A stretch of DNA of 64,000 bases from Haliotis cracherodii (GCF_022045235.1 NW_027266264.1:52390001-52454000), one strand, 5' to 3'. Shown: positions 1,932 through 22,239, counted from the first letter of the stretch. Program-made: numbers and translations. The notes: generated by a model from the sequence alone, not told the origin.

Positions 1932-2682
1932 CTACAGCCTGGCCCTCTTACAAACCTTCACCTCTACCTCATCATCATCCTCATCTCTCTTTCTCTTCCT
2001 GTCCACTATCTTATTCAGGGGTCCAGGTCTCCAGCTAGGGACTGGAAGAGGCACTCCTTGGTGGCTTAGGCTGGTCAGACTGCAGGACACATCACACTGG
2101 CTCAGGTTGGTGAAGCTGCTCACTGGGCTGACAGGGAGAGATGTGGTGCTTGAGGTCAGTCTTGGTCCATACTGAAAAGGGTCAGAGATCTTACAGAACC
2201 AGAAGTCTTTGTAAACTGTAGCTGAGAGGGTGATGCCATCTGGGAAACCTGACATGACTGATTCCAGGGATCTGCTAGGTTTGGGCCCATAGTTCAAGCA
2301 GGTGGTGCTGGAAGATGGGGAGGGAAGAAGATCATTGTAGAATTCCTCAGAATTCTTGAAAAGGGTAGAAGAGCTGGGGAAGGGGTCAGTAAGACTGATG
2401 TAACTCAGGCTGGTCAGGCTGGAGCTGGTGCTGGCTGGGAGAGACTCATCACATGGGCTGACAGGCCAGATATCTGAAGTGGCTGATAGAAATGTTGATG
2501 TTAGATCAGGGGTGTCAAAGAATGAAGTAAATCTGGGACATTCTGGATAAAGGAAGGAGTCATGGTTTTCTTGTAACTTGCCGCTGGGGCTGTTGGGGGT
2601 GTTACTTCCAAACATGGATAATCTAGGGGTAGGGGTAATGGGGCTGATGGACCTTCTAGTGGCAATGGAGGGGATGGCAGCA
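1932..2682 (-). pseudogene. Orphan S/T/P-rich NLS protein gene, copy 1, 5'-truncated (residual ORF 1932..2615, 227 aa)
   Basis: Near-identical to 5508..6258 (offset 3576). Homology breaks at ~2682 (GGCAGCA|TATAC), removing the ATG, acceptor and promoter. Confidence 0.8.
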
Positions 2683-3060
2683 TATACTATGAACGGATAC
2701 CTTTACTGATATTTTAACAATCATAAGAAAATACATCATGTAGGCAATTCATCTGACTGTAGACACAGTTAATGTTTACTGAGTTTCAGCTTATTTACAC
2801 ACCATATACAAACTACTAGCCAAGCCAAACAGTGGCCTCCACCTCCCCTTCTAGCCATACCCACACCACATTATATGAATTAACCTTTATTGAAAACTAC
2901 ATCATATAGGCAATTCATTTTAATGTTCACCGATCTTCAGATTATTTACACACTACATACAAACTACTGGTCTAACTAAGCAGTGGCCTCCTCCTCCCCT
3001 TCTAGCCACGCCCACACCACCTGTACTAGCCCTGACTTTAACATGATATCTTATAAGTGG
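2683..3060. repeat. ~140-180 bp repeat block (CAAACTAC...CAGTGGCCTCCACCTCCCCTTCTAGCCACGCCCACACCAC)
   Basis: Same units as 11430-13320 and, inverted, 25290-25740. Confidence 0.8.
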
Positions 3061-3485
3061 TTGATAGAAAATATATCATATGTCAAACAGAATTTTGTCT
3101 ATGATTTTGAGCCCAAATAAATATTGCCAGAGTTTTATCTGCACAGATTAGGTTTTAATACAAAGTTTGGCCTAATGTCCAGTCAGTTCTGGATAATACA
3201 TGCACTTCATTTATTAACGCTGACTAATTACTACCTGTCTTACTTTTTCATGTACATAGCTGACCAGATATTCTTTGAGGCAACATTGATTGTATTATTC
3301 ATATCATTTGGTATCATTTGATCAGAGCTTACATGTATCATTAACCAGGTAATGTTAGCTTGAGCAAAGGTCATGAATGTGTGTTGCCAGTACCTCTGAA
3401 AGGGGCAGGAGTAGGGGATATAAGTACTGACAGAACTAAGGACGACAGCCACTAGCCAGGCGTGAACCACTGGCTGGAACATCAG

Positions 3486-5218
3486 TAGGAGCTACAACTA
3501 CTGGCAGGGACAAGAATAGGAGCTACAACTACTGGCAGGGACAGGAATAGGAGCTACAACCACTGGCAGGGACATGAATAGGCGCTTAAACTACTGACAG
3601 GGACAGGAATAGGAGCTACAACTACTGACAGTGACATGAATAGGGATTACAACCACTGACAGGGACCGTAGCATGAGCTACACCCACTGACAGGGACAGG
3701 AAAAGAAGCTACAACCACTGAAATGGACAGGAATAGGAGCAACAACTTCTGACAGGGACAGGAAAAGGAGCAACAACCAATGACAAAGACAGGAATAGGA
3801 GCTACAACTACTGACAGGGACAGGAATAGGGGCTACAACTATGGGCAGGGACAGTAATAGGAGCTACAACAACTAACAGGGACAGGACTAAGAGCTACAA
3901 CCACTGACAGGGACAGGAATAGGAGCTACAACCACTAAAATGGACAGGATTAGACGCTACAACTACTGGCAGGGACAGGTATAGGAGCTACAACTTCTAA
4001 AAGTGACAGGAATAAGAGCTACAGCTATTTACAGGGACTGTAGCATGAGCTACACCCACTGACAGGGACAGGAAAAGAAGCTACAACCACTAAAATGGAC
4101 AGGAACAAGAGCTACAACCACTGACAGAGACAGGAATAGGAGCTACAACAACTGACAGGGACTGGAATAGGAGCTACAACTACTGACAGGGACAGGAAAA
4201 GGAGCAACAAGGACTGGCAAGGACAGGAATAGGAGCTATAACTACTCACAGGGACAGGAGCATGAGCTACAACCACTGACAGGGACAGGAATATGAGCTA
4301 CAACCACTGAAACGGACAGGAATAGGAGCTACAACTACTGGCAGGGACAGGAAAAGGAGCAACAACTACTGACAAGAACAGGAATAGGAGCTACATATAC
4401 TCCCAGGGATAGGAATAGGAGCTAAAACCACTGACAGGGCAAGGAATAGGAGCTTCAAGCACTGAAAGGGACAGGAATAGGAGCTACAACCACTGACAGG
4501 GACAGGAATAGGAGTTACAACCACTGACAAGAACAAGAATAGGAACAACAACCATTGGTAGGGACAAGAATAGGAGCTACAACCACTCACAGGGAGAGGG
4601 ATAGGAAATACAATGACTGGCAAGGACAGCAATATGAGCTACAACTACTGACAGGGACAGGAATAGAAGCTACAACCACTGACAGGAATAGGAGCTATAA
4701 CCACATACAGGAAAAGGAATAGGAACTACAACCACTGGCAGGAAAAGGAATAGGAGCTACAAACACTGGCAGGGACAGGAAAAGGAGCTACAACCACTGG
4801 TACTGACAGGAATAGGGGCTACAACTACTGGCAGGGACAGGAATAGGAGCTACAACTACTGACAGGGACATGAATGGGAGCTACAACCACTGACAGGAAT
4901 AGGAGCTACAACTACTGGCAGGTATAGGAGCTACAACTACTGACAGGGAGAGGGGTAGGAGCTACAACCACTGACATGGAGAGGGGTAGGAGCTACAACC
5001 ACCGGCAGTGACAAGAATATGAGCTACAACCACTGGCAGGGACAGGTATAGGAGCTGCAACTACTGACAGGGACATGTATAGGAGCTACAACTACTGGTG
5101 GGGACAGGAATAGGAGCTTCAACCTCTGACAGGGACAGGAATAGGAGCTACAACAACTGAAAGGGACAGGAATAGGAGCTACAACCACTGGTAGGGACAG
5201 GGAAAGGAGACACAACCA
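3486..5218. repeat. 31-bp minisatellite downstream of orphan gene copy 2
   Basis: Same unit; variant order matches the array at 1-1642. Confidence 0.95.
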
Positions 5219-5507
5219 AGGAAGGAATGAGAGTTGGGACTAGAATCAGGCTGGAACACAAGTGGGAAATGTTTAATGACAGTGATAAGGAATAGGGCTG
5301 TAAATTATTACAAACTGGAGTGATAGCGGAAGGACACAACTATTTTAAATATAGATATAATATAGATAGGACAATAAGATATAGTGTGACTAAAATAATA
5401 GCAGAAATTAAAGATAGTTCTACTCCGAATAAAACATAAAAAAGATTTTCTAAAATAAATGTTTCAAACATACATTAACAATGTACATCTGACAATACCT
5501 ACCATAC

Positions 5508-6344
5508 CTACAGCCTGGCCCTCTTACAAACCTTCACCTCTACCTCATCATCATCCTCATCTCTCTTTCTCTTCCTGTCCACTATCTTATTCAGGGGTCC
5601 AGGTCTCCTGCTAGGGACTGGAAGAGGCACTCCTTGGTGGCTTAGGCTGGTCAGACTGCAGGACACATCACACTGGCTCAGGTTGGTGAAGCTGCTCACT
5701 GGGCTGACAGGGAGAGATGTGGTGCTTGAGGTCAGTCTTGGTCCATACTGAAAAGGGTCAGAGATCTTACAGAACCAGAAGTCTTTGTAAACTGTAGCTG
5801 AGAGGGTGATGCCATCTGGGAAACCTGACATGACTGATTCCAGGGATCTGCTAGGTTTGGGCCCATAGTTCAAGCAGGTGGTGCTGGAAGATGGGGAGGG
5901 AAGAAGATCATTGTAGAATTCCTCAGAATTCTTGAAAAGGGTAGAAGAGCTGGGGAAGGGGTCAGTAAGACTGATGTAACTCAGGCTGGTCAGGCTGGAG
6001 CTGGTGCTGGCTGGGAGAGACTCATCACATGGGCTGACAGGCCAGATATCTGAAGTGGCTGATAGAAATGTTGATGTTAGATCAGGGGTGTCAAAGAATG
6101 AAGTAAATCTGGGACATTCTGGATAAAGGAAGGAGTCATGGTTTTCTTGTAACTTGCCGCTGGGGCTGTTGGGGGTGTTACTTCCAAACATGGATAATCT
6201 AGGGGTAGGGGTAATGGGGCTGATGGACCTTCTAGTGGCAATGGAGGGGATGGCAGCATCAGTCCACGTTGTGTGGGGGTAGAGACAGGTACAGCGAGGC
6301 TGAAAGTCATCCAGACTCACCCAACTCTCATTGGGACACAACAT
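5508..6344 (-). CDS. Orphan 278-aa Ser/Thr/Pro-rich protein with C-terminal bipartite NLS, copy 2
   Basis: Intact ORF from MLCPNESW. The ATG lies 9 nt after a conserved acceptor (CTTTAACACACTTCAG|GACCACAAG ATG), so the track's extra 17 codons are mostly intronic. Ends KRKRDEDDDEVEVKVCKRARL. Confidence 0.7.
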   Translation of the reverse strand: MLCPNESWVSLDDFQPRCTCLYPHTTWTDAAIPSIATRRSISPITPTPRLSMFGSNTPNSPSGKLQENHDSFLYPECPRFTSFFDTPDLTSTFLSATSDIWPVSPCDESLPASTSSSLTSLSYISLTDPFPSSSTLFKNSEEFYNDLLPSPSSSTTCLNYGPKPSRSLESVMSGFPDGITLSATVYKDFWFCKISDPFQYGPRLTSSTTSLPVSPVSSFTNLSQCDVSCSLTSLSHQGVPLPVPSRRPGPLNKIVDRKRKRDEDDDEVEVKVCKRARL

Positions 6345-7573
6345 CTTGTGGTCCTGAAGTGTGTTAAAGATTAATTTTATTAATTGTAAGTACATTTTAC
6401 ATGAAAAATCAAGAGACGTGTATTTAAAAATAATATGCTTTAATTGTAATTGGTTTATTTTAAAAGAAACTTCAAGGTATGTCTTATTGTCGACACATTT
6501 GAAGTTTCAAGAAGGGCAATGTCTAATATTAATGCCTAAATCACTTGAATTACCTTCACAGTTGAACTCTCTTGCACCAACTGAAGATTATACTAGAGTA
6601 CTCAACTCCAGACTCAAGTCTCACAAGAGAAATCTGTAAAATACATGCATGTATGAACATGTGACATGTGTGAAATAAATTAATGAGTGAATAACTGGAT
6701 GATTTTTCAGTAACTGTTTTATTCCAACCTCAAACCTTTTAAAAGAGCCTCATTCTCACATTAGGTGTTTGTCACTATAATGCCAAGGTAGGTCCTGCAC
6801 TGATGCACTAACCGGGCCTTGTGTTAATAAATAATATGAAATACATGACAAAACATGAGATGGCAGGTTAGATAAAAAGCCATGTGAATGACCAAATTAA
6901 AACCCGAATCCAGCCTTTCATTAATTAATAACTGATATGACATAGGACAGTCCGCCAACCAAATGGAAAGGGGAAGACATACACTGGTGCTACAAAGATA
7001 GATGTAGGGCCAAGTATCGCTGTCAACATGTTGTAACAGATCAATTACAAAAGAACCGTCAAAATACCGGTTATCCAACTAGAAGCCCTGGGCTTTTCTT
7101 ATGTGCAATCGGGATTACTAAATGTCTGTTTTGAATACTGCATGTTTAGCCCCTAGATTCATATTTCTATCATGTAGATTCAAACATCCGGGTATAGGCC
7201 TAGAAATGATGTCACAACCCCAGTCGGCCTGTTGGCCTGTGTCTTACGGTAAAAAATGTATGTAGAAGTTTACATTACATGGACATTTAGTCGGAACAAT
7301 GTTGATTTCCCGTGGGTCTACTCTAGAAAGGACATTTTGGCTGTTGTCAAGGATGACTTGTTACGTTTAAATTGACAACAAAGGTAAATCTGGGAGAATT
7401 TAAGCAACAGAAGACTATATCTATACAGGGAATACGTTTAATTACCTTACTGCACTAAGAGGGAAGTACAGGAACTCAAATATATCGATGAAACTTTCAA
7501 AAGAGCAGAGCTAGGTGTGATAGCAATGATACGCTTCGGTAAACGAAGATTCGTAAGAGCCGGGCTTGAACTT

Positions 7574-7602
7574 GGCAACCGTTACCCTAGCAACACCGGA
7601 AC
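7574..7602 (-). promoter_or_regulatory. RFX X-box (GTTACCCTAGCAAC 7581-7594), extra GGCAAC half-site and ETS core (CCGGAA); promoter of copy 2
   Basis: 14-bp X-box palindrome matching GTNRCN-N2-RGYAAC in a short CpG-rich patch, retained in copies 2-4. Confidence 0.6.
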
Positions 7603-9058
7603 TCACTCCTTTTTTTTAAAAGATATATCTTAAGTGAATGAATGAAATATTTAGAATAACAGCAAAGTGAAATTCCCCGAAAATACAAATGTAAAATATA
7701 GAAAACTTACCCTTGCCTATATATAATTCCTAAAAGGGAGCCTACTCTGAAAGTTATAAAAAGTTATCTCCCTTTGCAAAGCCACTCAAAAATATATATA
7801 TTAAACCAAGAAACTATATTTTGAGACAAATGTTTCGAAAGTCAGTTTTACTTAGAAAAGGGGCTCTAATTGGCTTGTCCGTTTTCACACCCCTAAAATG
7901 TACTTACATGTAATAGTGGTACTATATTTTAAGTCACGCAATAATGTGATTATTTCCTTCCTATTTGTAAATAAGACAAATATTTATCTCCAAATGAAAA
8001 ACAACAAATACAAATAAATGATCTTGCAAGGGTACACACTACAGTGTTGTTTGTTTATTTCGTCAGAGCTTTTCTGATTATTGATGTAAATCTAAACATC
8101 TTTGATATATTCTAATGGAAGATTGTGCAACATTACTGATGCATATAAGTGAATAGTTATGTAAGTGACGTTGTGCAAAGACTTGAAATATCTATCGATA
8201 CGTCTATGGTCTATTGAAAATAGGATGAGGTGTACAATGACATTTGCACGAATTACACAGTTAAGACATCGCTCATTATTTTTTGTTGACAAGTCAACAT
8301 TGCCTCAGCTATGTTTACCTGATTCTTTTCTCGTCAAAGGTTTATTAATTGCTTTAAATATGAACATTATTATAGCTAACCCACAGTTACACAACACAAC
8401 AATATATACATCTTATGCTTTTTACATTTAAGGATTACGCAAATATTTTAAAATATTTAAAAGCCATATGTCATGTGTCACCGTAGCTCAGGTCGACAAT
8501 TAGACGTCCTCAAATCAAATAATGCATGTTCAAATCCCGCTGGCGACACATGTTTTCCGACCCAAAAAAAATAGTTCTGTCTATTCCAAGTGTAAATCAA
8601 TTGAAATGTGGTTCCAGATAACGTATAACTGACAACCTACTCTCCTTTCCTGAAAAATGATGGAGCGTTTAAACAATAGAAAGTGCGTTTTAATTAGTTT
8701 GTAGGTCGCGAATAACCGTGCACTTTAAACTGACACGCCGTTGTATAAATGAAATAGCGCTCAAGTGGCATTAAAGCAAACCCACTCACTCACTGTAACG
8801 TAGCCATGCCTCAGAACGACTCAATTAGACGACAGTCCCTTACCTATTGTTTCCCTGGATCAAAAGTAAGGCGCGATTGTAACAAACAGAAAAAATAACG
8901 CATCGCTTCACTGACATTTTTCCAATTGCAATCACAGTGGGGTTTCTAAGGAGATTTTTTTTCATGTAGAAACAATTCCCTCGCCAGAGGCAGTTTTGTC
9001 AACTCGAGCCAACTGTATAATGCCTCCAAGTAGAGTTCACTAAGAGTTCTCTTTCCAT

Positions 9059-9157: not shown

Positions 9158-11429
9158 AACAGATCAAGTTGTTTTTTCTGGTTGTTATAAGGTCAAATTA
9201 TATCCATGTAGGATGTATGTTGTTTTGTGGCCGAGTGTTGTGATATGTCTACACTTCGATATGTATGACGTTATCTTTATCAGAACATCCAATATGTTTA
9301 GTGTTTAAAGTGTTTAGAATCAGTGTTGCTATGTTATCACATAGTGGGGACATCCCATCTGATGCAGCCTAGTGAATACCACACCAGACGTTATCCTGTA
9401 ATCTGGACAGAATGCATTATTGTATAATTACTGTAAACATGGTAAACAATGAAATATTCTCAATGAATTTGTTGTTTTTGTAGTCATGGAGTATAAACTT
9501 AATATGTTTTGTACAGTACACGTTTTACTGTGATCTACGTACACAGCGTTATTATTTAATTGATTGTAGCTTTATGCTGTAATCAATAATATTACAACAT
9601 AATTATCATGGCAGCCAGTTTGTATTTGAGGGCCTGTAGGGTAGTCTAGGCCACATTGGTTTTGTTTGCCCATATGGGTACTATGTGTGAGCACGAGTCG
9701 TACAATCTTCTATGGCACCGCAGTTCGCTGTACAGAGTTGCACACGAGGAACCTATCACAAGGGGTTTGAATCATGGTTCACTCCTAATGATATGTTTCT
9801 AGGTTGGCAGCACCATACCCATGCTCGTGGGTTTTACCAAAGTGAAAAAAATGTCTTAGATCTACATCACTTCAGGCTTTCCTCCCACATTAAGCTGACA
9901 CTTTATATAACTGGACTACTGTTAAAAACGGCATTAGTCACAACTCACTCACTATCTGTGAAGCACATTTCTAGTGTCCACCATGATATGGCAGGAATAT
10001 TGCTAAAAGCTGTGTGATACTTGATCACTGGAAGTAAATGAATTAGGAGTGGACATACCAGAGTGTGGCGACTATTAGCATTATTCCAGCCACATCACCA
10101 TTACTGCTTCATACAATTAGAACTGATATGGCTGACCTTATGTAGTTCATAATGATGTAATATATTGTGAAGTGTACCATGAAATAACATTCCCCGGGCA
10201 CACAGGCACCCACTCACTCACTCACTGATACACTCACTCACTGATACACTCACTCACTCATTAGCGTTTCAATGCCCTGGCCGCTTCATACCAAGAGATG
10301 GTGGACGATGGTGATTGTTGTTACTGCTCAGCATTAAGAGGATAAAACAAGAACTGGCCAAATGTGGAATAAGACAAAAAAAAGAATTCTCCTCTAAGCC
10401 TGCTGATTACTCAACATAAAGATTGTTCATGATGTCAAATACTGGTTTGCCTGGTGCAGACTTAATTATGTACAGGCCACAGTCATTTAGCTGGAATACA
10501 ACATTGCGTGGCCACTAACAACAAACAAACAAATAATGGATGTCTTCCAAATTCAGGGACTACATATGAGAAGGATGAGATTAATCTTTTTGACAGGTTT
10601 ATGTTCTTGTCAGAACGGTATGTCATGATGTAATTATTCTCCATTTGTATGGATGGTCTCCAGACTGTTGCCCCAGTGGACAGCCGTGAAGAGCTAGATT
10701 CCCAGCAACCTTTGCACCAGGGGACTTCTTGTATCCGGTGGCCAGCTTAGGTGACATTTCTTTGTTTATTGTGTTTATTGCGTGGCATCGTACTCGAACT
10801 ATGGTTACTCATTACATCAATCACTCGATTGTCTGTCCCTGACGTGATTATATACAGGCAACAATGACATACCTGGACTCATACAGTGATTACACAACAA
10901 ACAAACAAACAAACAAACAAACGATAAATGTCAGTTCTGGTGATTGAATGGTCAAAGAGAGGAAAAAAACACAAGTTTCACTCCAGAGAACATGTTTGTG
11001 ATATGGCGCCACATTTTCCACTGTCACAGCCCACATCTGCCTTGGGTAAGGGCAATGAGGTAGCCTGGTGGGAGAAAGCATTAATGCCGAGGACCGTGGT
11101 TCGATTCCCTACATAGGTACAAAGTGTGAAGCCCATTTCTGGTGTCACCTGCTGGGATATTGCCTTGGGTATGAATGACAACAAAAACACAGACTTTAGA
11201 TATTAAGATTTATTTTTCTGAACAGATTATGTTTGTGAAGAGTGAATGAACAAAGGAGAAAGATAAAAGTAAACTTAAGATATTATGATTTATTTCTCTG
11301 AAACAGATTTATATTTTTAAAGCATAAATCAACCGAAAGACGCAATTATATTTTTTAATTCAACAATTATGATTCCACCTTTATTGATGTTATGATATCA
11401 ATAACAAAATTAATCATATTTCTAATTTA

Positions 11430-13320
11430 TTTGACACAGTTAATGTTTATCGATTTTCAGCTCCTTAATACACTGCATACAAACTACCTGCCTAACTAAA
11501 CAGTGGCCTCCACCTCCCCTTCTAGCCACGCCCACACCACCTGTACTAGCCCTGACTATAACATTATATGAATGGATACCTTTACGATGTTTTAACAATC
11601 ATAAGAAAATACATCATGTAGGCAATTCATCTGACTGTAGACACAGTTAATGTTTACTGAGTTTCAGCTTATTTACACACCATATACAAACTACTAGCCA
11701 AGCCAAACAGTGGCCTCCACCTCCCCTTCTAGCCATACCCACAACACATTATATGAATTAACCTTTATTGAAAACTACATCATGTAGGCAATTCATTTTA
11801 ATGTTTACCGATCTTCAGATTATTTACACACTACATACAAACTACTGGTCTAACTAAGCAGTGGCCTCCACCTCCTCTTCTAGCCACGCCCACACCATCT
11901 GTACTAGCCCTGACTATAACATTATATGAATGGATACCTTTACCGATGTTTTAACAATCATAAGAAAATACATCATGTAGGCAATTCATCTGACACAGTT
12001 AATGTTTACAGATCTTCAGGTTATTTACACTCTACATACAAACTACTAGCCTAGCCAAACAGTGGCCTCTAGCCATACCCACACCACATTATATGAATTA
12101 ACCTTTATTGAAAACTACATCATGCATAAAAGCATAAATCAACCGAAAGACGCAATTATATTTTTTAATTCAACAATTATGATTCCACCTTTATTGATGT
12201 TATGATATCAATAACAAAATTAATCATATTTCTAATTTATTTGACACAGTTAATGTTTATCGATTTTCAGCTCCTTAATACACTGCATACAAACTACCTG
12301 CCTAACTAAACAGTGGCCTCCACCTCCCCTTCTAGCCACGCCCACACCACCTGTACTAGCCCTGACTATAACATTATATGAATGGATACCTTTACGATGT
12401 TTTAACAATCATAAGAAAATACATCATGTAGGCAATTCATCTGACTGTAGACACAGTTAATGTTTACTGAGTTTCAGCTTATTTACACACCATATACAAA
12501 CTACTAGCCAAGCCAAACAGTGGCCTCCACCTCCCCTTCTAGCCATACCCACAACACATTATATGAATTAACCTTTATTGAAAACTACATCATGTAGGCA
12601 ATTCATTTTAATGTTTACCGATCTTCAGATTATTTACACACTACATACAAACTACTGGTCTAACTAAGCAGTGGCCTCCACCTCCTCTTCTAGCCACGCC
12701 CACACCATCTGTACTAGCCCTGACTATAACATTATATGAATGGATACCTTTACCGATGTTTTAACAATCATAAGAAAATACATCATGTAGGCAATTCATC
12801 TGACACAGTTAATGTTTACAGATCTTCAGGTTATTTACACTCTACATACAAACTACTAGCCTAGCCAAACAGTGGCCTCTAGCCATACCCACACCACATT
12901 ATATGAATTAACCTTTATTGAAAACTACATCATGTAGGCAATTCATTTTAATGTTTACCGATCTTGTAATGTTTTGATATTCATATTAAAAATACATCAT
13001 ATTTTCCATTTATTTGACAGAGTTAATGTTTATTGATCTTCAGATTATTTACACATTACATACAAACTACTGGTCTAACTAAGCAGTGGCCTCCTCCTCC
13101 CCTTCTAGCCATACCCACACCACATTATATGAATTAACCTTTATTGAAAACTACATCATATAGGCAATTCATTTTAATGTTTACCGATCTTCAGATTATT
13201 TACACACTACATACAAACTACTGGTCTAACTAAGCAGTGGCCTCCACCTCCCCTTCTAGCCACGCCCACACCACCTGTACTAGCCCTGACTTTAACATTA
13301 TATCTTATACGTGGTTGATA
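11430..13320. repeat. ~140-180 bp repeat block, overlapping an exact 810-bp tandem duplication (~11317-12124 = ~12127-12934)
   Basis: AGCATAAATCAACCGAAAGA at 11321 and 12131; following sequence identical by eye. Confidence 0.9.
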
Positions 13321-13739: not shown

Positions 13740-14466
13740 TAGGAGCTACAACTACTGGCAGGGACAGGAATAGGAGCTACAACTACTGACAGGGACAGCA
13801 ATAGGAGCTACAACTACTGGCAGGGACAGGAATAGGAGCTACAACTACTGGCAGGGACAGGAATAGGAGCTACAACCACTGGCAGGGACATGAATAGGCG
13901 CTTAAACTACTGACAGGGACAGGAATAGGAGCTACAACTACTGACAGTGACATGAATAGGGATTACAACCACTGACAGGGACAGGAATATTAGCTACAAC
14001 CACTGACAGGGACATGAATAGGTGCCAAACTACTGACAGGGACCGTAGCATGAGCTACACCCACTGACAGGGACAGGAAAAGAAGCTACAACCACTGAAA
14101 TGGACAGGAATAGGAGCAACAACTTCTGACAGGGACAGGAAAAGGAGCAACAACCAATGACAAAGACAGGAATAGGAGCTACAACTACTGACAGGGACAT
14201 GAATAGGGGCTACAACTATGGGCAGGGAGAGGGGTAGGAGCTACAACCACTGACATGGAGAGGGGTAGGAGCTACAACCACCGGCAGGGACAGGTATAGG
14301 AGCTGCAACTACTGACAGGGACAGGTATAGGAGCTACAACTACTGGTAGGGACAGGAATAGGAGCTTCAACCTCTGGCAGGGACAGGAATAGGAGCTATA
14401 ACAACTGAAAGGGACAGGAATAGGAGCTACAACCACTGGTAGGGACAGGGAAAGGAGACACAACCA
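13740..14466. repeat. 31-bp minisatellite downstream of orphan gene copy 3 (shorter array)
   Basis: Same unit as arrays 1 and 2. Confidence 0.95.
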
Positions 14467-14755: not shown

Positions 14756-15592
14756 CTACAGCCTGGCCCTCTTACAAACCTTCACCTCTACCTCATCATC
14801 ATCCTCATCTCTCTTTCTCTTCCTGTCCACCATCTTGTTCAGGGGTCCAGGTCTCCAGCTAGGGACTGGAAGTGGCACTCCTTGGTGGCTTAGGCTGGTC
14901 AGACTGCAGGACACATCACACTGGCTCAGGTTGGTGAAGCTGCTCACTGGGCTGACAGGGAGAGATGTGGTGCTTGAGGTCAGTCTTGGTCCATACTGAA
15001 AAGGGTCAGAGATCTTACAGAACCAGAAGTCTTTGTAAACTGTAGCTGAGAGGGTGATGCCATCTGGGAAACCTGACATGACTGATTCCAGGGATCTGCT
15101 AGGTGTGGGTCCATAGTTCAAGCAGGTGGTGCTGGAAGATGGGGAGGGAAGAAGATCATTGTAGAATTCCTCAGAATTCTTGAAAAGGGTAGAAGAGCTG
15201 GGGAAGGGGTCAGTAAGACTGGTGGAACTCAGGCTGGTCAGGCTGGAGCTGGTGCTGGCTGGGAGAGACTCATCACTTGGACTGACAGGCCAGATATCTG
15301 AAGTGGCTGACAGAAATGTTGATGTTAGATCAGGGGTGTCAAAGAATGAAGTAAATCTGGGACATTCTGGATAAAGGAAGGAGTCATGGTTTTCTTGTAA
15401 CTTGCCGATGGGGCTGTTGGGGGTGTTACTTCCAAACATGGATGATCTAGGGGTAGGGTTAGTGGGGCTGATGGACCTTCTAGTGGCAATGGAGGGGATG
15501 GCAGCATCAGTCCAAGTTGTGTGGGAGTAGAGACAGGTACAGCGAGGCTGAAAGTCACCCAGGCTCACCCAACTCTCATTGGGACACAACAT
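14756..15592 (-). CDS. Orphan 278-aa Ser/Thr/Pro-rich protein with C-terminal bipartite NLS, copy 3
   Basis: Intact ORF, about 12 aa differences from copy 2, same acceptor and ATG context. Confidence 0.7.
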   Translation of the reverse strand: MLCPNESWVSLGDFQPRCTCLYSHTTWTDAAIPSIATRRSISPTNPTPRSSMFGSNTPNSPIGKLQENHDSFLYPECPRFTSFFDTPDLTSTFLSATSDIWPVSPSDESLPASTSSSLTSLSSTSLTDPFPSSSTLFKNSEEFYNDLLPSPSSSTTCLNYGPTPSRSLESVMSGFPDGITLSATVYKDFWFCKISDPFQYGPRLTSSTTSLPVSPVSSFTNLSQCDVSCSLTSLSHQGVPLPVPSWRPGPLNKMVDRKRKRDEDDDEVEVKVCKRARL

Positions 15593-15652: not shown

Positions 15653-15933
15653 GTGAGTGAGTGAGTTGGGTTTAATGCCGCTTTTAACAGTATTGCAGTT
15701 ATATCACGGCGTGTCAGCTTGATGTGGGAGGAAAGCCCGAAGTGATGCAGGTCTCAGATGTTTACCACTTCGGTGAAACCCACGAGCACAGGTATGGAGC
15801 TGACAAACTTAGAAACATAATCGGGGCGAACCGGGATTCGAACCCACAATCATAGGTTTCTGGCGTGCCCAAGGGACGCAACTCTGCACAGTGAATCGCG
15901 GCGCTTTAGACGACTGGGCCACCCGTGCCCCCT
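15653..15933 (-). mobile_element. tRNA-derived SINE (family A, V-domain-like) in the 5' intron of copy 3
   Basis: A box TGGCCCAGTCG, B box GGTTCGAATCC, (ACTC)n tail. 11-bp TSD ATTTTACATGA (15642-15652/15934-15944); empty site present in copy 2. Confidence 0.92.
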
Positions 15934-17115
15934 ATTTTACATGAAAAATCAAGAGACATGTATTTAAAAATAATATGCTTTTAATGTCATTGGTTTATTT
16001 TAAAAGGAACTTCAGGTAATGTCTTATTGTCTACGCATTTGAAGTTTCAAGATGGGCAATGTCTAATACTAATGCCTAAATCACTTGAATTACCTTCGCA
16101 GTTGAACTCTCTTGCACCAACTCAAGATTATACTAGAGTACTCAACTCCAGACTCAAGTCTCACAAGAGAAATCTGTAAAATAAAACACATGCATGTATG
16201 AACATGTGACTGTGTGAAATAAATTCATCAGTGAATGATTGGATGATTTTTCAGTAACTGTTTTATTCCAACCTCAAACCTGTTAAGAAGGGCCTCATTC
16301 TCACATTAGGTGTTTGTCACTATAATGCCAAGGTAGGTCCTGCACTGATGCACTAACCAGGCCTTGTGTAAATAAATAGGTTTAAATACATGACAAAACA
16401 TGAGATGGCAGGCTAGATAAAAAGCCATGTGAATGACCAAATTAAAACCCGAATCCAGCCTTTCATTAATTAATTACTGATATGACATAGGACAGTCCGC
16501 CAACCAAATGGAAAGGGGAAGACATACACTGGTGCTACAAAGATACATGTAGGGCCAAGTATCGCTGTCAACATGTTGTAACAGATCAATTACAAAAGAA
16601 CCGTCAAAATACATATTATCCAACTAGAAGCCCTGGGCTTTTCTTATGTGCAATCGGGATTACTAAATGTCTGTTTTGAATAGGCCTACTGCATGTTTAG
16701 CCCCTAGATTCATATTTCAACCATGTAGATTTAAACATCCGGGTATAGGCCTAGGGATGATGTCAAAACCCCAGTCGGCCTGTTGGCCTGTGTCTTACGG
16801 TAAAAAATGTATGTAGAAGCTTACATTACATGGACATTTAGTCATTACAATGTAGAGTTCTAGTGGGTCAAGTAAGGACATTTTGGCTGTTGTCAAGGAT
16901 GACTTGTTACGTTTAAATTGACAACAAAGGTAAATGTGGGAACATTGGAGCAACAGAAAACTATATCTACACAGGAAATACGTTTAGTTACCTTACTGCG
17001 GTAAGAAAAAAGTACAGGAACTCAAATATATCGACGAAACTTTCAAAAGAGCAGAGGTGTGATAGCAATGATACGCTTCGGTAAACGAAGATTCGTAAGA
17101 GCCGGGCTTGAACTT

Positions 17116-17144
17116 GGCAACCGTTACCCTAGCAACACCGGAAC
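17116..17144 (-). promoter_or_regulatory. RFX X-box (17123-17136) + ETS core; promoter of copy 3
   Basis: GTTACCCTAGCAAC-A-CCGGAA identical to copy 2. Confidence 0.6.
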
Positions 17145-17344
17145 TGACATTTTTTTTTTAAGATATATCGTAAGTGAATGAATGAAATATTTAGAATAAC
17201 AACAAAGTGAAATTCCCCGAAAATACAAAAGTAAAATATAGAAAACTTACCCTTTCCTAAATATAATTCCTAAAAGGGAGCCTACTCTGAAAGTTATAAA
17301 AAGTTACCTCCCTTTGCAAAGCCGCTAAAAAATAAATATATTAA

Positions 17345-17630
17345 CCCTCTGGATGCCGAGTCTTTTTTCTGACGCACATTTTCCTAAGATCGGAAAAGTG
17401 AAGGTTGAGAGAGAATTGCGCCCACGCGCACTGGATGTACTCCTGGCTATAAAATTGAGCAGAGGTGGGTAATATTAATGTTCCAATTTGATGGTGTAAA
17501 TTTAACTGCAAATATTAAACCGGTTTTAAAAAAGACACTTCTAAGTGTTTTCCGAGAATTTATTCTGCAAGGAAAAACAGTTAATTTCTCCGCTTTTTAT
17601 CGTACACAGATAAAAGTAATGTGCTTTATT
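17345..17630. mobile_element. piggyBac-type transposon end fragment at the inversion breakpoint
   Basis: TTAA|CCCTCTGGATGCCGAG starts exactly where homology to the copy 2 upstream flank (TTAA at 7801) stops; partner end not found. Confidence 0.55.
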
Positions 17631-18936
17631 TTACAGCATAAAGCTACAATCAATTGTTCACTGTTGTAACAAAACTGTACGTAGATCACAGTAAAACGTG
17701 TACTGTACAAATGATATGCTCCATGACTACAAAGCAATTTCATTGAGAATATTTCATTGTTTACCATGTTTACAGTAATCATACAATTATGCATTCGGTC
17801 CAGATTACAGAAAAACATCTGGTGTGGTATTCTCTTGGCTGCATCAGATGGGATGTCCCCAGTATGTGATAACAAAGCAACACTGATTCTAAACACTTCA
17901 AACACAACTGGACATATTTGATGGTCTGATAAAACTAACTTCATCCATATCCCAACACTCGGCCAACCAATAAAATACATCCTTCATAGATATGATTTGA
18001 CCGTATAACAACCAGAATGAATCTGGCACGGAGACCTGACCAGCATGGTGAATGAGTGGATGGTTTTACGCCGCTTTCAGCAATATTCCAGCCCTATGAC
18101 GAGGGAAAGCTGAAACCACTAGACAACCTCACCGCCCTGACCAGCATGGTGGGACTCCGAGAGCCGCTGCATTACCTCAAGTCGTCTCCAAGCTTGCCAA
18201 GATGACTCCAGTGCTAACCAGCTCACCGATATTGAGTGAATGAATGTTGCTTTGCACTCATCGACACTATTCCAGCCATGTCATGTAAATAAACAAGCCT
18301 GGAGCTGGCAAACTAGTTTCTGAAAGCATGAACAAGGATCACATTGCCTGACCACAGATCCCCATCTTTGCTGGCTTCTTCAGAGTCCACAAAGGGATAT
18401 AGCAGAATGTCTATCATTACCTAGGGATTACTACAGCCATGGTGCTGTGGTGGTTTGTGAAATATCAACAGATACAGCAGGGGAAACTGATTTACCGCAA
18501 AGAAAATCCATTTACATCGTAACAAACTGAAGGCCTAGAAAACATCTTATTCAACAGTATGTATCAACATTTCCTCAGTGACACAAATCTATATCTCAAC
18601 AAAGTAAACCATAGTAGATAGCAGGTTAGTATATATGGTGCACATGGTGTACTTCAGATCACTTTGTCATGTGATGTGTGGATCAGAAGGGGCCATCAGC
18701 TAGAGGCTGATATAAGTATTTTCATTCATCCTGCGAGTCTTGGCACTAGGTTCCCCTGGAACTGCTGCCTGAAACTCGGCATCCTGACTGTTATGGAATC
18801 CAGACAACCCTGACCCCAGACTGACAGCTTGATCCAGATGATGGTGTGCTGTATTGGAGGTCAAGGTCAAGTTTTGTGAACTGTGACGTTGATGCGAGTG
18901 AGTCTGTGAGTTGAGCACGTCAACCTGTGCAACCTG
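17631..18936 (-). pseudogene. Duplicated SIRT6 3' end: last 77 codons + stop (18700-18933) and 3' UTR/flank
   Basis: Direct paralogue of ~29130-30077; frame intact ([13 protein letters not shown]...TYISL*). Confidence 0.9.
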
Positions 18937-18984
18937 ATGGAAAGCGAACTCTTAGTGAACTCTACATGGAGGCATTTTTAGGAA

Positions 18985-19153
18985 TGGAGTGAGTGAGTGA
19001 GTATGGTTTTACGCCGCTTTTAGCAATATTCCAGCAATATCACGGCGGGGGTCAACAGAAATGGGCTTCACACATTGTACCCATGTCGGAATCGAACCCG
19101 GGTCTTCGTCGTGACGAGCGAACGCTTGAACCACTAGGCTACCCGCTCGCCCC
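18985..19153 (-). mobile_element. tRNA-derived SINE (family B)
   Basis: A box TAGCCTAGTGG, B box GGTTCGATTCC, (ACTC)n tail, 9-bp TSD TTTTAGGAA (18976-18984/19154-19162). Confidence 0.92.
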
Positions 19154-20177
19154 TTTTAGGAAAAGAGAGTTGGTTGTCAATTATTCATTATCTGGAACCA
19201 GCGTTTCAATTGATTTACACTTGGAGTAGACAGAACTATTTTTTGTCGGAAAACATGTGTTGCCAGCTGGGTTCAAACCTGCATTATTTGATTTGAAGAC
19301 GTCTAATTGTCGTCCTGAGCTGCGGCGATACTGACAGAGAGTGCGGTCTGAAATTAAACTTTTAAATATTTTGAAATATTTGCATAATCTTTAAATCTAA
19401 AAAAACATAATATGTATATTTATGTTGCATTACAGTGGGTTACCTATAACAATGTTCATATTTAAAGCAATTTGATAAACCTTTAAATTGACGAGAGGAA
19501 AATCAGGTGAACTTAGCTGAGGCAATGTAGAATCATTCTAGACTTGAGTTGGACTTTTTAACATTTATTCTCTAGTGTCAGGGAGATAGACTATGTGAAA
19601 GTGTAAAAGTAGGGATATGTTTTAAGTAGGGGAATGTTCTCGTAACTCTCCAATAAATAATGAGGATATCTTGTTTGTGTAAGTTGATGCACATTTGATG
19701 TCATTGTGTATCTCAGCCCATAGACGTATAGAGAGATATTTCACCATCTTTGGAAAACGTCCCTTACTTAACCATTAACTTAGATGCATCAGTATTGTTG
19801 CACAATCTTTCATGAGAATATATTAAAGATGTTTACATTTACCAAGTACCACTATTACATCTAAGTGCATCTTATATGTATGAAAACGGACAAGCCAATT
19901 AGAGACTATTTTCTTGGTAAAACTGACTTTCGAAACATTTAGCTCAACATATAGTTTCTTGGTTTTATATATATCTACTCGTTTTTTAATTTTTTAGCGG
20001 TATTGCAAAGGGAGATAACTTTTTATAACTTTCAGAGTAGGCTCCCTTTTAGGAATTATATTTAGGAAAGGGTAAATTTCTGTATTTTATATTTGTATTT
20101 TCGGGGAATTTCACTTTGTTTTTATCCTAAATATTTCGCTCATTCTCTTAAGTTCTACAGAAAAAAAAAAATGTCAA

Positions 20178-20206
20178 TTCCGGTGTTGCTAGGGTTACGG
20201 TTGCCA
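20178..20206 (+). promoter_or_regulatory. ETS core + X-box variant (GTTGCTAGGGTTAC 20185-20198); promoter of copy 4
   Basis: One substitution relative to copies 2 and 3; followed by a conserved donor region CAGTAAG|GTAACT at ~20330. Confidence 0.55.
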
Positions 20207-21159
20207 AGTTCAAGCCCGGCTCTTACGAATCTTCGTTTACCGATGCGTATCATTGCTATCACACCTCTGCTCTCTTGAAAGTTTCGTCGATATATTTGAG
20301 TTCCTGTACTTTCCACTTACCACAGTAAGGTAACTAAACGTATTTCCTGTATAGATATAGTCTTCTGTTGCTCCAATGTTCCCAGATTTACCTTTGTTGT
20401 CACTTTAAACGGAACAAGACATTCTTGACAACTGCCAAAATGTCCTTTCTAGACCCACTAGAACTCCACATTGTAATGATTAATCTCCACGAAATGTAAC
20501 ATTCTACATACATCCTTTACCGTAAGACACAGGCCAACAGGCTGTGTGGGTTTGTAACACTATCTGTAGGCCTATAAACCTACCCAGATGTTTGAGTCTA
20601 CATGATAGAAATATGAATGAATCTAGGGGCTAAACATGCAGAAACCTAAAGAGACATTTAGGGGCCTAGTAATCCCGGTTTCCAGTTGGATAAAATGTAG
20701 TTTGACAGTCCCTATCTTTGTGTATTGTAGGGAAGAATAATATGTTATTCTTTTCCAATTGACCTGTTACTACATGTTGACAGCAATACTTGGCCCTACA
20801 TCTGTCCTACCCAATTTCTTTTGGTTGGCGGACTGTCTTATGTTAGTAACTAATTAATGAAAGACTAGATTCGGGTTTAATTTGATTTATCTAGACCTTC
20901 CCTGACCAACCCCCAAAGTGAGAATGAGGCCCTTTTTAAAAGGTTTGAGGTTGGAATAAATCAATTACTGAAACACACCCAGTGATGAACATGTCACTTC
21001 AGCATCTCCTTGTACATTATTGACAATTTTGCACCAGGATAATTTTGTCCCAAATTTCCTTGTTTTTGAACATCCGGTCATTCACTGATTAATTTATTTC
21101 ACAAATTCATTGGAAAAACAAGCATACCATTTCATACATGCATGGATTATATTTTACAG

Positions 21160-21239
21160 ATTTCTCTTGTGAGACTTGAGTCTGGAGTTGACTACTCTAG
21201 CATAATCTTGAGTTGGCGCAAGAGAGATAAACTGTGAAG
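21160..21239 (+). other. Putative non-coding 5' exon of orphan gene copy 4
   Basis: ATTTTACAG| ... GAAG|GTAA; both sites conserved in copies 2 and 3, and the exon is better conserved than the flanking intron. Confidence 0.55.
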
Positions 21240-21405
21240 GTAACTCAAGTCATTTTTAGGCATTAGTATTAAACATTGTCCTTCTTAAAACTTTAAAGGC
21301 CTAGACAATATCACATCACTTGAAGTTTCTTTTCTCTTGATTTTGTCTTGTAAAATTTGCTTTTAATTTATAAACTTTATCTTTAACACACTTCAGGACA
21401 ACAAG

Positions 21406-22239
21406 ATGTTGTGTCCCAATGAGAGTTGGGTGAGTCAGGATGACTTTCAGCCTCGCTGTACCTGTCTCTACCCCCACACAACTTGGACTGATGCTGTCAT
21501 CCCCTCAATCGCCACAAGAAGGTCCATCAGCCCCTCCAACCCTACCCCTAGGTCATTCATGTTTGACAGTAACAGCCCCAACAGCCCCAGCGGCAAGTTT
21601 CTAGAAAACCATGACTCCTTCCTTTATCCAGAATGTCCCAGATTTACTTCATTCTTTGACACCCCTGATCTAACATCAACATTTCTATCAGCCACTTCAG
21701 ATATCTGGCCTGTCAGTCCAAGTGACGAGTCTCTCCCAGCCAGCACCAGCTCCAGCCTGACCAGCCTGAGTTCCACCAGTCTTACTGACCCCTTCCCCAG
21801 CTCTTCTACCCTTTTCAAGAATTCTGAGGAATTCCACAATGATCTTTTTCCCTCCCCATCTTCCAGCACCACCTGCTTGAACTATGGGCCTAAACCCAGC
21901 AGATCCCTGGAATCAGACATGTCAGGTTTCCCAGATGGCATCACCATCTCAGCTACAGTTTACAAAGACTTCTGGTTCTGTAAGATCTCTGACCCTTTTC
22001 AGTATGGACCAAGACTGACCTCAAGCACCACATCTCTCCCTGTCAGCCCAGTGAGCAGCTTCACCAACCTGAGCCAGTGTGAGGTGTCCTGCAGTCTGAC
22101 CAGCCTAAGCCACCAAGGAGTGCCACTTCCAGTCCCTAGCAGGAGACCTGGACCCCTGAATAAGATGGTGGACAGGAAGAGAAAGAGAGATGAGGATGAT
22201 GAGGTAGAGGTGAAGGTTTGTAAGAGGGCCAGGCTGTAG
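21406..22239 (+). CDS. Orphan 277-aa Ser/Thr/Pro-rich protein with C-terminal bipartite NLS, copy 4 (inverted)
   Basis: Intact ORF; acceptor AG at 21395-21396; A at -3 of the ATG; differs from copy 3 by ~18 aa and one in-frame codon deletion. Confidence 0.72.
   Translation: MLCPNESWVSQDDFQPRCTCLYPHTTWTDAVIPSIATRRSISPSNPTPRSFMFDSNSPNSPSGKFLENHDSFLYPECPRFTSFFDTPDLTSTFLSATSDIWPVSPSDESLPASTSSSLTSLSSTSLTDPFPSSSTLFKNSEEFHNDLFPSPSSSTTCLNYGPKPSRSLESDMSGFPDGITISATVYKDFWFCKISDPFQYGPRLTSSTTSLPVSPVSSFTNLSQCEVSCSLTSLSHQGVPLPVPSRRPGPLNKMVDRKRKRDEDDEVEVKVCKRARL

What the first reader, a model, noticed from the sequence alone, without database searches (positions are those of the whole stretch)
1932..22239. 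Amplified orphan nuclear-protein gene family (4 copies, both orientations) abutting SIRT6
Seen: three intact 277-278 aa ORFs and one 5'-truncated copy. The protein is very S/T/P-rich with many SP/TP sites and ends in KRKR-x11-12-KRARL. The copies have no frameshift or stop and only one 3-nt indel, while their flanks are full of indels. The splice sites of two non-coding 5' exons and the ATG context are conserved. Known: the C-terminus fits a classical bipartite importin-alpha NLS. I recognise no domain, transposon or viral protein. Inference: a lineage-specific, still-amplifying, largely disordered nuclear protein. This is the profile of ampliconic germ-line or conflict genes, and it is the best candidate for an undescribed system here.
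Basis: partly seen in the sequence, partly recalled or inferred. Interest (0 to 1): 0.85.

Follow-up and report, generated by a model that had tools for sequence, protein, structure and literature searches.

The report
Abalone-only amplified nuclear-protein gene family
This is a real, spliced and transcribed gene family found only in abalones, copied about eleven times mostly in a tandem array next to SIRT6, encoding a disordered protein with a nuclear import signal; it is a fairly ordinary lineage-restricted family of unknown function.

Summary
The window (Haliotis cracherodii, chromosome contig C1) carries three intact 277-278 aa ORFs and one 5'-truncated copy. All end in KRKR-x11/12-KRARL.

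The family is larger than reported. The genome has 9 intact copies, 1 truncated and 1 broken:
- seven ~9.5 kb tandem units, each carrying a fragment of the SIRT6 3' end;
- one inverted copy (D) beside the real SIRT6;
- an inverted pair 3.3 Mb away.

The predicted 5'-UTR splice junctions appear in RNA-like contigs from several studies. The coding sequence is constrained: dN/dS is about 0.47, and it has about 1 indel/kb against 10-20/kb in the flanks. Paralogues group by species, which points to concerted evolution or repeated expansion.

The family is not a complete orphan. A second abalone-only subfamily on another chromosome shares the N-terminal ~120 aa and a near-invariant ETS + RFX X-box promoter block, but has no NLS.

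No Pfam, viral, TP53INP/DOR or structural relative was found, and AlphaFold predicts disorder. RefSeq already models these genes as "uncharacterized protein". There is no sign of positive selection, and germ-line or conflict roles remain untested.

An earlier scan note on the X-box was tested here and holds. Interest is modest.

The parts
20178..20204 (+). Copy D promoter module: ETS core TTCCGG, then an RFX X-box (GTTGCTAGGGTTAC, one mismatch to the family consensus GGTAAC), then a GTTGC half-site
   Evidence: With up to 3 mismatches the 27-mer occurs only 13 times in the 1.18 Gb genome, all at family promoters.
20230..20329 (+). Copy D non-coding exon 1. The 5' end is not mapped. The donor follows 20329.
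   Evidence: GT..AG joint 20327/9->21158/60 in contigs of runs X1, X4 and X5. The donor is conserved in all 9 copies.
21160..21239 (+). Copy D non-coding exon 2
   Evidence: The loose 28-mer ahead of exon 3 equals the 3' end of exon 2.
21397..22303 (+). Copy D exon 3, with the CDS at 21406-22239 (277 aa) and the start of the 3' UTR. There is an alternative internal acceptor at 22003.
22699..24869 (+). 31-bp minisatellite 3' of copy D (about 71 units). RNA-like contigs run into its first ~200 bp.
14756..15592 (-). Copy C CDS (278 aa)
16094..16173 (-). Copy C exon 2. The 3' end at 16094 is from a tool result; the 5' end assumes the 80-nt length seen in D.
17117..17143 (-). Copy C promoter module (ETS + X-box), an exact match to the family consensus
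5508..6344 (-). Copy B CDS (278 aa)
6554..6633 (-). Copy B exon 2. The 3' end at 6554 is from a tool result; the 5' end assumes the 80-nt length seen in D.
7575..7601 (-). Copy B promoter module (ETS + X-box), an exact match
1869..2683 (-). Copy A: a 5'-truncated copy whose CDS remnant is 1932-2683. It lies within a 2683-bp block (1-2683) that is 99.93% identical to 3577-6259.
1..1642 (-). 31-bp minisatellite 3' of copy A
3465..5218 (-). 31-bp minisatellite 3' of copy B
13740..14464 (-). 31-bp minisatellite 3' of copy C
9192..11747 (-). 3' flank of unit C, an inverted copy of 25462-29515. It ends in a fragment of the SIRT6 3' UTR (9192-9593, like 29119-29515), which marks the unit boundary.
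17667..18936 (+). Fragments of the SIRT6 3' end upstream of D: 17667-17951 is like 29158-29449 (83%), and 18412-18936 is like 29552-30076 (95%). The second includes the last ~79 codons of SIRT6 plus 3' UTR.
29840..38603 (-). The real SIRT6 gene: first coding exon 38361-38603, SIR2 domain exon near 37591-37914, last exon 29840-31135. It is convergent with copy D.

Best explanation
This is a protein-coding gene family that, as far as can be detected, exists only in abalones (Haliotis).

Gene structure. Each gene has a promoter with an ETS site and an RFX X-box, two short non-coding exons, and one coding exon. The coding exon gives a ~277-aa serine/threonine/proline-rich protein predicted to be disordered.

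Protein. It has a conserved N-terminal module (MLCPNESWVSLDD... to about residue 120). A second abalone-only subfamily on another chromosome shares that module. The C-terminus is a bipartite nuclear localisation signal, KRKR-x11/12-KRARL, found only in this subfamily.

Shown here:
- The founder-like copy sits tail-to-tail with SIRT6.
- A ~9.5 kb segment holding the gene, a 31-bp minisatellite and a piece of the SIRT6 3' end was copied head-to-tail seven times. An inverted pair was also copied 3.3 Mb away.
- The copies are transcribed and spliced as predicted.
- The reading frame is kept by purifying selection. This is strongest on the N-terminal module and the C-terminal third; a linker at residues 44-70 is relaxed.
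- Copies resemble each other more within a species than between species.

Inferred:
- The protein is imported into the nucleus by importin-alpha.
- It acts through short linear motifs and phosphorylation, not through a folded domain.
- An RFX factor drives its transcription, which would point to ciliated cells or spermatogenic cells.
- Unequal crossing-over and gene conversion, possibly helped by the minisatellites, drive copy-number change and homogenisation.
For: Observation and copy number.

Taxonomic range:
- Word-indexed search of 5.8 billion proteins: 7 clusters, all Haliotis.
- Profile search of 1.84 billion representatives: only the Haliotis cluster.
- RefSeq models exist in H. cracherodii, H. 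rufescens, H. rubra and H. asinina.

Transcription and splicing:
- GT..AG joint 20329^21160 in 3 runs from 3 studies.
- Exon 2 joined to 21397 and to 22003.
- Contig depth is higher over exons than introns.
- One contig continues into the 3' flank of paralogue L008, matching it exactly.

Constraint:
- Mean dN/dS 0.47.
- By region: 0.21 for residues 1-43, 0.79 for 44-70, 0.30 for 201-278.
- CDS has about 1 indel/kb against 10-20/kb in flanks.
- The frame is intact in 26 or more proteins from 4 species.

Concerted evolution or repeated expansion: tree.

Array anatomy with SIRT6 fragments.

Second subfamily: own-genome profile hits; hhalign probability 97.4%, E 1e-11 over 113 columns.

Shared promoter:
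- blastn 71-73% over 260-273 nt and alignment A4.
- The 27-mer is unique to 13 family promoters in the whole genome, with 0 hits in the reversed control.

Disorder: AlphaFold2 mean pLDDT 39 for the full protein and 52 for the N-terminal module, with no secondary structure in either.

NLS: the sequence fits (K/R)(K/R)-X10-12-(K/R)3/5 and is nearly invariant across 27 sequences.
Against: - No protein-level evidence. Nuclear localisation is inferred from a consensus only.
- The RNA runs are labelled 'RNA?' (a guess) and are contigs, so tissue, expression level and exact transcript ends are unknown.
- All contigs covering codon 11 carry Leu, not copy D's Gln. Transcription of copy D itself is therefore not shown.
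- Synonymous divergence in the CDS (0.05) is lower than intron divergence (0.08-0.30). Part of the CDS conservation is thus likely gene conversion and not selection.
- The alignments behind the AlphaFold models are shallow (10 and 18 rows), so a fold could have been missed.
- An X-box match is not RFX occupancy.
- 'Haliotis-only' means no detectable relative. The profile search did not recover even the second subfamily at database scale, so equally distant relatives in other gastropods would be missed.
Confidence: 0.72

Rival explanations
1. Ampliconic germ-line or genetic-conflict gene family. Copies would be amplified and homogenised because dosage or an arms race in gametes or early embryos favours many near-identical copies.
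For: - Multi-copy in every species examined, with within-species homogeneity.
- Very recent duplications.
- Inverted (palindrome-like) pairs: C/D head-to-head and the 49.08 Mb pair.
- In other animals, from general knowledge, an RFX-type promoter is compatible with spermatogenic expression.
Against: - No region has dN/dS above 1. The whole gene is at 0.47.
- The sequence is held, at least in part, by contigs of 14 RNA-like runs from 8 studies, which argues against very narrow expression. Tissues are unknown.
- No sex linkage is known or tested.
- The related second subfamily shares the promoter and occurs only as dispersed loci, not as a large tandem array.
Confidence: 0.12
2. An adaptor with an LC3-interacting region, working like TP53INP/DOR. 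The invariant N-terminal E-S-W-V-S-L-D-D would dock on ATG8/GABARAP, and the C-terminal NLS would place the protein in the nucleus.
For: - By inspection, the consensus N-terminus (copies B and C and all other species) fits the published xLIR pattern, with acidic residues around W-x-x-L.
- It lies in a predicted disordered segment.
- The W-V-x-L-D-D core is kept in the second subfamily.
- The overall layout resembles TP53INP: a small disordered protein with an N-terminal aromatic motif and a C-terminal basic signal (from general knowledge).
Against: - The xLIR pattern is expected by chance in roughly one in five proteins of this length (my estimate).
- No sequence relationship to DOR: Pfam PF14839 gives no hit, and hhalign aligns only 6 columns at 0.5% probability.
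- A canonical DOR gene exists elsewhere, on contig C2.
- Copy D has lost the Leu.
Confidence: 0.08
3. The ORFs are not functional proteins. They would be transcribed, recently duplicated sequence whose open frames persist only through youth and gene conversion.
For: - Paralogues are young (dS 0.01-0.08).
- CDS synonymous divergence is below intron divergence, which suggests conversion.
- dN/dS of 0.47 is only moderate constraint, and the third-position excess is weak (21/21/36 variable sites, p = 0.056).
- An alternative acceptor at 22003 removes the start codon in some transcripts.
Against: - The frame is intact across species that differ by 19-26% at the protein level, with only in-frame indels.
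- Within H. cracherodii, flanks collect 10-20 indels/kb.
- The N-terminal module is conserved in a subfamily whose remaining sequence is unalignable.
- Constraint differs by region: 0.21 and 0.30 at the ends against 0.79 in the linker.
Confidence: 0.06
4. A domesticated or active transposon or viral gene that spreads its own copies.
For: Multiple copies in both orientations and a dispersed pair 3.3 Mb away.
Against: - No Pfam hit.
- No relative in 2.9 million viral contigs.
- No terminal repeats.
- The repeated unit is a ~9.5 kb host segment that includes SIRT6 3'-end fragments, typical of segmental duplication.
- The genes have spliced 5' UTRs and a conserved cellular-type promoter.
Confidence: 0.02

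Closest known systems
Taxonomically restricted (orphan) tandem gene families encoding intrinsically disordered proteins
   Same: - No detectable homologue outside one genus.
- Low-complexity S/T/P-rich sequence with a predicted lack of fold.
- Expansion by tandem segmental duplication, with species-wise clustering of paralogues.
   Different: - Unusually well-defined conserved parts: an N-terminal ~120-aa module, a bipartite NLS, and a promoter block that is more conserved than most of the protein.
- There are two architecturally different subfamilies.
TP53INP1/TP53INP2 (DOR family, Pfam PF14839)
   Same: - A small, acidic, disordered protein.
- An aromatic-acidic motif near the N-terminus (E-S-W-V, also present in DOR region 2) and a basic signal at the C-terminus.
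- A nuclear destination is inferred.
   Different: - No significant sequence similarity.
- The abalone genome has its own canonical DOR gene on another chromosome.
- Multi-copy, not single-copy.
Ampliconic multi-copy gene families of animal germ lines (for example on sex chromosomes)
   Same: High-identity tandem and inverted copies, ongoing duplication, and homogenisation within species.
   Different: - No evidence of germ-line-restricted expression, sex linkage or positive selection.
- Units are ~9.5 kb and copy number is about 10, far smaller than classical amplicons.
RFX (X-box) target genes
   Same: - A canonical X-box (GTTGCT-AG-GGTAAC) lies about 130 nt upstream of the first splice donor.
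- It is conserved between subfamilies that have otherwise diverged.
   Different: - Known RFX targets are mostly ciliary structural or transport genes, or MHC class II genes. This product is a disordered protein with an NLS.
- RFX binding was not tested.

Membership tests
Classical bipartite NLS (importin-alpha cargo) | Sequence consensus (K/R)(K/R)-X10-12-(K/R)3 of 5 | tested here: met
   KRKR, then an 11- or 12-residue acidic linker, then KRARL. It sits at the C-terminus and is nearly invariant in 27 sequences from 4 species.
Classical bipartite NLS (importin-alpha cargo) | Importin-alpha binding and nuclear accumulation that depends on both basic clusters | not testable with these tools
   Needs a tagged protein with and without cluster mutations.
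TP53INP / DOR (PF14839) | Match to the DOR profile, including region 2 (ESWF-TPPPCF...SPMENLLIEHPSMSVY) | tested here: not met
   - No Pfam hit even at E <= 1-10.
- hhalign aligns 6 columns at 0.5% probability.
- The genome's real DOR exon scores 1.9e-31.
RFX X-box regulated genes | X-box motif (GTHNYY-N2-RRNAAC) close to the transcription start | tested here: met
   GTTGCTAGGGTAAC at B (7581) and C (17123). D has the variant GGTTAC (20185). Subfamily 2 has GTTGCTACGGTAAC.
RFX X-box regulated genes | Evolutionary conservation of the site beyond its neutral surroundings | tested here: met
   - The 27-nt block is identical in 8 of 9 subfamily-1 copies.
- It is kept in 4 subfamily-2 promoters.
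- It occurs 13 times genome-wide against 0 in the control.
RFX X-box regulated genes | RFX occupancy, or dependence of expression on RFX | not testable with these tools
   Needs ChIP, ATAC footprinting or a reporter assay.
Ampliconic germ-line / conflict genes | Many near-identical copies in tandem and inverted arrays | tested here: met
   - 11 loci, with 92-99.9% identity.
- Head-to-head pairs are present.
Ampliconic germ-line / conflict genes | Signature of positive selection (dN/dS > 1 overall or in a patch) | tested here: not met
   Mean 0.47; the highest regional value is 0.79 at residues 44-70. Only within-species paralogues were available.
Ampliconic germ-line / conflict genes | Germ-line-restricted expression | not testable with these tools
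   Run identities and tissues are coded. Only contigs were available.
Transposon or viral gene | Homology to a transposase, viral protein or known accessory gene; terminal repeats around the unit | tested here: not met
   - Pfam: none.
- IMG/VR: none.
- The unit is a host segment bounded by SIRT6 3' fragments.
LIR-containing ATG8 binders | Core [W/F/Y]-x-x-[L/I/V] preceded by acidic or phosphorylatable residues, in a disordered region | tested here: met
   E-S-W-V-S-L-D-D at residues 6-13 in all copies except D, which has Q11. The region has low pLDDT. The motif alone is weak evidence.
LIR-containing ATG8 binders | Physical binding to ATG8/GABARAP | tested here: inconclusive
   The complex prediction returned 'no answer'. 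It counts neither for nor against binding.

The most novel reading that the evidence does not exclude
The two subfamilies could form an abalone-specific, RFX/ETS-driven module of disordered proteins expressed in ciliated or spermatogenic cells. On this reading one branch gained an NLS and was amplified next to SIRT6 under dosage or conflict pressure. It would be a young nuclear regulator whose copy number varies between individuals and species and affects larval or gamete biology.
Probability: 0.1. Interest if true: 0.6.

Novelty: new member of a known kind. Interest (0 to 1): 0.3.

Why it matters
If the reading holds, this is a clean example of how a lineage-restricted gene family grows and diversifies. 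The regulatory block and N-terminal module are shared by two subfamilies. One branch gains a nuclear import signal and is then amplified by unequal crossing-over that drags along a piece of the neighbouring SIRT6 gene.

It also gives abalone biologists a defined, testable set of genes. Four Haliotis species carry RefSeq models for them. The family has a predicted regulator (RFX) and a predicted location (the nucleus).

It does not open a long-standing question, and no new mechanism is shown. Lineage-specific tandem families of disordered proteins are common in mollusc genomes.

Tried and rejected
- Pfam on three copies, the N-terminal module and subfamily 2: nothing significant.
- ESM Atlas by features: no usable hit for either subfamily. 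The structural neighbours of the Atlas model of subfamily 2 rest on a model with pLDDT 0.42 and were ignored.
- Profile search of 1.84 billion representatives: only the Haliotis cluster.
- Viral contigs: no relative.
- Derivation of the ORF from the SIRT6 C-terminal tail: a permissive tblastn of the protein against the masked window found no match in the SIRT6 last exon.
- TP53INP/DOR membership: rejected.
- Zinc-binding reading of C3/C18/C20/H24: weakened, because subfamily 2 lacks the CxC...H insert.
- Complex prediction of copy B residues 1-45 with a GABARAP stand-in. The stand-in was insect protein P0138, two residues different from the abalone exon, used because the abalone gene is split by introns. 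The tool was busy seven times and then returned 'no answer', score 0.02. This is no evidence either way.
- The first complex request used copy D. I changed it to copy B after seeing that D alone has Q11.
Synteny and CDS DNA from other Haliotis species could therefore not be obtained, and between-species dN/dS was not computed.
- Literature: no paper mentions the LOC or XP identifiers. A Haliotis + RFX + cilia search found nothing relevant.
- Rfam: no family in the window.
The CDS lies in one exon and was always given by reference.
- The N run at 46343-46635 was left alone.

Full report
**What is there.** The window is Haliotis cracherodii contig C1:52,390,001-52,454,000. The window's own proteins sit in a cluster of H. 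cracherodii RefSeq proteins on an 89.1-Mb contig. The ORF listing confirms the ORFs:

| Copy | Coordinates | Strand | Length |
|---|---|---|---|
| D | 21406-22239 | + | 277 aa |
| B | 5508-6344 | - | 278 aa from the conserved Met |
| C | 14756-15592 | - | 278 aa |
| A | 1932-2683 | - | truncated |

Copy A's homology to the others begins at about residue 29. All copies end in KRKRDEDD(D)EVEVKVCKRARL. Copy D is 39% S+T+P, has pI 5.25 and carries 8 SP/TP sites.

**Size and anatomy of the family.** A six-frame search of the whole 1.18-Gb genome finds 11 loci:
- nine intact copies on C1;
- the truncated copy A;
- one interrupted copy on the small contig C28.

I fetched the 50 kb to the left of the window and mapped pieces of unit D onto it. 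There are seven head-to-tail minus-strand units of 9.1-9.9 kb, running from C1:52.351 Mb to window position 17344. Read along the gene's own 5'-to-3' direction, each unit holds:
- the promoter and non-coding exon 1;
- non-coding exon 2;
- the coding exon;
- a 31-bp minisatellite;
- a ~360-bp repeat;
- about 4 kb of 3' flank, ending in a fragment of the SIRT6 3' end.

Copy D is inverted. It lies head-to-head with C and tail-to-tail with the real SIRT6. SIRT6's last exon is 29840-31135 (-), its first coding exon is 38361-38603 (-), and its SIR2 domain lies near 37591-37914.

D's own upstream region also carries SIRT6 3' fragments. Positions 18412-18936 are 95% identical to 29552-30076, which includes the last ~79 SIRT6 codons. 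A head-to-head pair at C1:49.08 Mb carries the same SIRT6 3'-UTR fragment, so it derives from the SIRT6-adjacent cluster.

Copy A is part of a 2683-bp block that is 99.93% identical to the 3' part of unit B. An 806-bp piece at 11319-12124 is repeated at 100% identity. So the array is still rearranging, or these two very recent repeats are assembly artefacts. That cannot be excluded here.

**It is a gene.** RNA-like contig sets from four runs in four studies were laid on 19600-22900.
- A GT..AG joint that skips 20330-21159 is present in three runs.
- One contig that starts at 21395 is preceded by 28 nt. These equal the 3' end of exon 2 in copies B, C and D. This supports junction 21239^21397.
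- The same 28-mer, and in one run exon 1 directly, is also joined to an internal acceptor at 22003. That isoform removes the start codon and the first 199 codons.
- Contig depth is several-fold higher over exons than introns.
- Contigs that diverge from D at 22301 continue exactly as the 3' flank of paralogue L008. More than one paralogue is therefore transcribed.
- Every contig covering codon 11 has Leu, not D's Gln. Transcription of D itself is not demonstrated.

The runs are only guessed to be RNA. The spliced joints are the argument that they are.

RefSeq already models these genes in four Haliotis species as 'uncharacterized protein'. In H. rufescens some are mis-named 'probable maltase-glucoamylase 2'. 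No paper in the library mentions their identifiers.

**Constraint and mode of evolution.**
- Among the nine intact paralogues, mean dN is 0.023 and mean dS is 0.049, a ratio of 0.47.
- pN/pS by region:

| Residues | pN/pS |
|---|---|
| 1-43 | 0.21 |
| 44-70 | 0.79 |
| 71-140 | 0.46 |
| 141-200 | 0.56 |
| 201-278 | 0.30 |

- Variable sites by codon position are 21/21/36.
- CDS distance is 0.025-0.039 with about 1 indel event/kb. Introns and flanks are at 0.07-0.30 with 10-20 events/kb.
- Synonymous divergence in the CDS is below intron divergence. Gene conversion centred on the coding exon therefore probably adds to purifying selection.
- Proteins from H. rubra (81% identical) and H. asinina (74-79%) keep the frame with only in-frame indels.
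- In a maximum-likelihood tree, paralogues group by species or species pair. The splits are cracherodii+rufescens against rubra+asinina, with asinina and rubra copies mostly in their own clades. This fits concerted evolution or independent expansions.
- Nothing reaches dN/dS > 1, so the conflict-gene signature is not seen.

**Not a complete orphan.** A profile of the family searched against the animal's own genome gave weak hits on contig C23. These are open frames of about 270-378 aa (367 aa from the conserved Met at the locus examined) that begin MLCPSESWVNLDD....
- They form a second subfamily with 4-5 loci.
- Only H. cracherodii and H. rufescens proteins match it, one of them named 'dentin sialophosphoprotein-like'.
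- Profile-profile comparison of the two subfamilies gives 97.4% probability, E 1e-11, with 50% identity over 113 columns. It covers the N-terminal ~120 residues.
- Beyond that point, subfamily 2 has acidic S/T-rich repeats, ends in ...ILIAYSFQL and has no NLS.

The promoter and exon 1 are even better conserved than the protein.
- blastn gives 71-73% identity over 260-273 nt.
- The alignment shows a near-invariant block, TTCCGG-TGTTGCTA(G/C)GGTAAC-GGTTGC.
- This block is an ETS core followed by a canonical RFX X-box (GTHNYY-N2-RRNAAC).
- With up to 3 mismatches, the 27-mer occurs 13 times in the genome. All 13 are at the nine subfamily-1 and four subfamily-2 promoters, and the reversed control gives none.
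- Copy D alone has a mismatch inside the X-box. D alone also has L11Q in the otherwise invariant N-terminal motif, so D may be drifting.

This confirms and extends the earlier scan note s1-823418. The SIRT6 fragment upstream of D agrees with note s1-823388. I did not test that note's splice-acceptor claim.

**What the protein might do.**
- Pfam finds nothing.
- The ESM Atlas gives no usable neighbour.
- The 1.84-billion-protein profile search finds only the Haliotis cluster.
- Viral contigs hold no relative.
- AlphaFold2 predicts no structure for the full protein (mean pLDDT 39) or for the N-terminal module with both subfamilies in the alignment (pLDDT 52, pTM 0.10). The alignments are shallow, so this fits disorder but does not prove it.
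- The C-terminus fits the bipartite NLS consensus and is nearly invariant.

My best reading is a disordered nuclear protein that acts through short motifs and phosphorylation, transcribed under RFX/ETS control. From general knowledge of RFX targets, that control points to ciliated cells or spermatogenic cells.

I also considered a TP53INP/DOR-like LC3-interacting reading, because E-S-W-V-S-L-D-D fits the LIR pattern. DOR membership is rejected. The complex prediction with a GABARAP stand-in gave no answer, so this stays a low-probability idea.

**Verdict.**
- Copy number was under-counted.
- The family has a sister subfamily.
- The germ-line or conflict profile is untested, and unsupported by the one test available.
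- The genes are already annotated, though uncharacterised.

This is a new member of a known kind, a taxonomically restricted tandem gene family, with a neat conserved promoter. Interest is modest.

Noticed in passing
window 22000-22003 (and the same place in the other copies): There is an alternative 3' splice site inside the coding exon. Contigs in three runs join exon 2 or exon 1 to position 22003, and contigs break at 22001 in all four runs. The isoform lacks the start codon and the first 199 codons. Only a 24-codon ORF (M254 to the end, essentially the NLS) remains.
   Followed up: partly
G000:C23 at 37.29, 40.34, 40.98, 41.86 and 41.89 Mb (L021, L022): A second Haliotis-only subfamily (proteins of 338-421 aa), with acidic S/T-rich repeats such as SQTSLGPDFDDSTFQPLPVDSACSLDQA. 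It shares the N-terminal module and the ETS + X-box promoter but has no NLS. The 41.89 Mb locus has stop codons.
   Followed up: partly
window 20185-20198 and 21436-21438: Copy D, the copy next to the real SIRT6, is the outlier of the family. Its X-box half-site reads GGTTAC instead of GGTAAC. It has Gln instead of the otherwise invariant Leu11. Its flanks are the most diverged (81-88%). No RNA contig carried its Gln codon.
   Followed up: partly
window 1-1642, 3465-5218, 13740-14464, 22699-24869: A 31-bp minisatellite (23-71 units) follows every copy. D's version is only about 70% like the others. RNA-like contigs run into its first ~200 bp, so it may be part of the 3' UTR. It may also favour unequal crossing-over.
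   Followed up: no
window 11319-12934: An 806-bp segment is repeated head-to-tail at 100% identity, within a region of ~360-bp repeats. This is either a very recent duplication or an assembly artefact.
   Followed up: no
window 29840-31135 (-): The last SIRT6 exon encodes a long Q/P-rich C-terminal extension of about 350 residues after the end of the catalytic domain. It shows no similarity to the amplified family.
   Followed up: partly
G000:C28:364167-365010 (L011/L012): A diverged family copy (83% identity) on a 3.35-Mb unplaced contig. The match is split in two and has an in-frame TAA in one reading. RefSeq still models it as a 268-aa protein with a different C-terminus that lacks KRARL.
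   Followed up: no
window 33346-34014 and 52544-53877: Two further tandem-repeat blocks: a ~33-bp period inside the SIRT6 locus, and a GC-rich block (GC 0.54) of irregular period.
   Followed up: no
window 56781-56875 (-): ARAGORN calls a 95-nt tRNA-Thr(TGT). The length suggests an intron or a tRNA-derived repeat.
   Followed up: no
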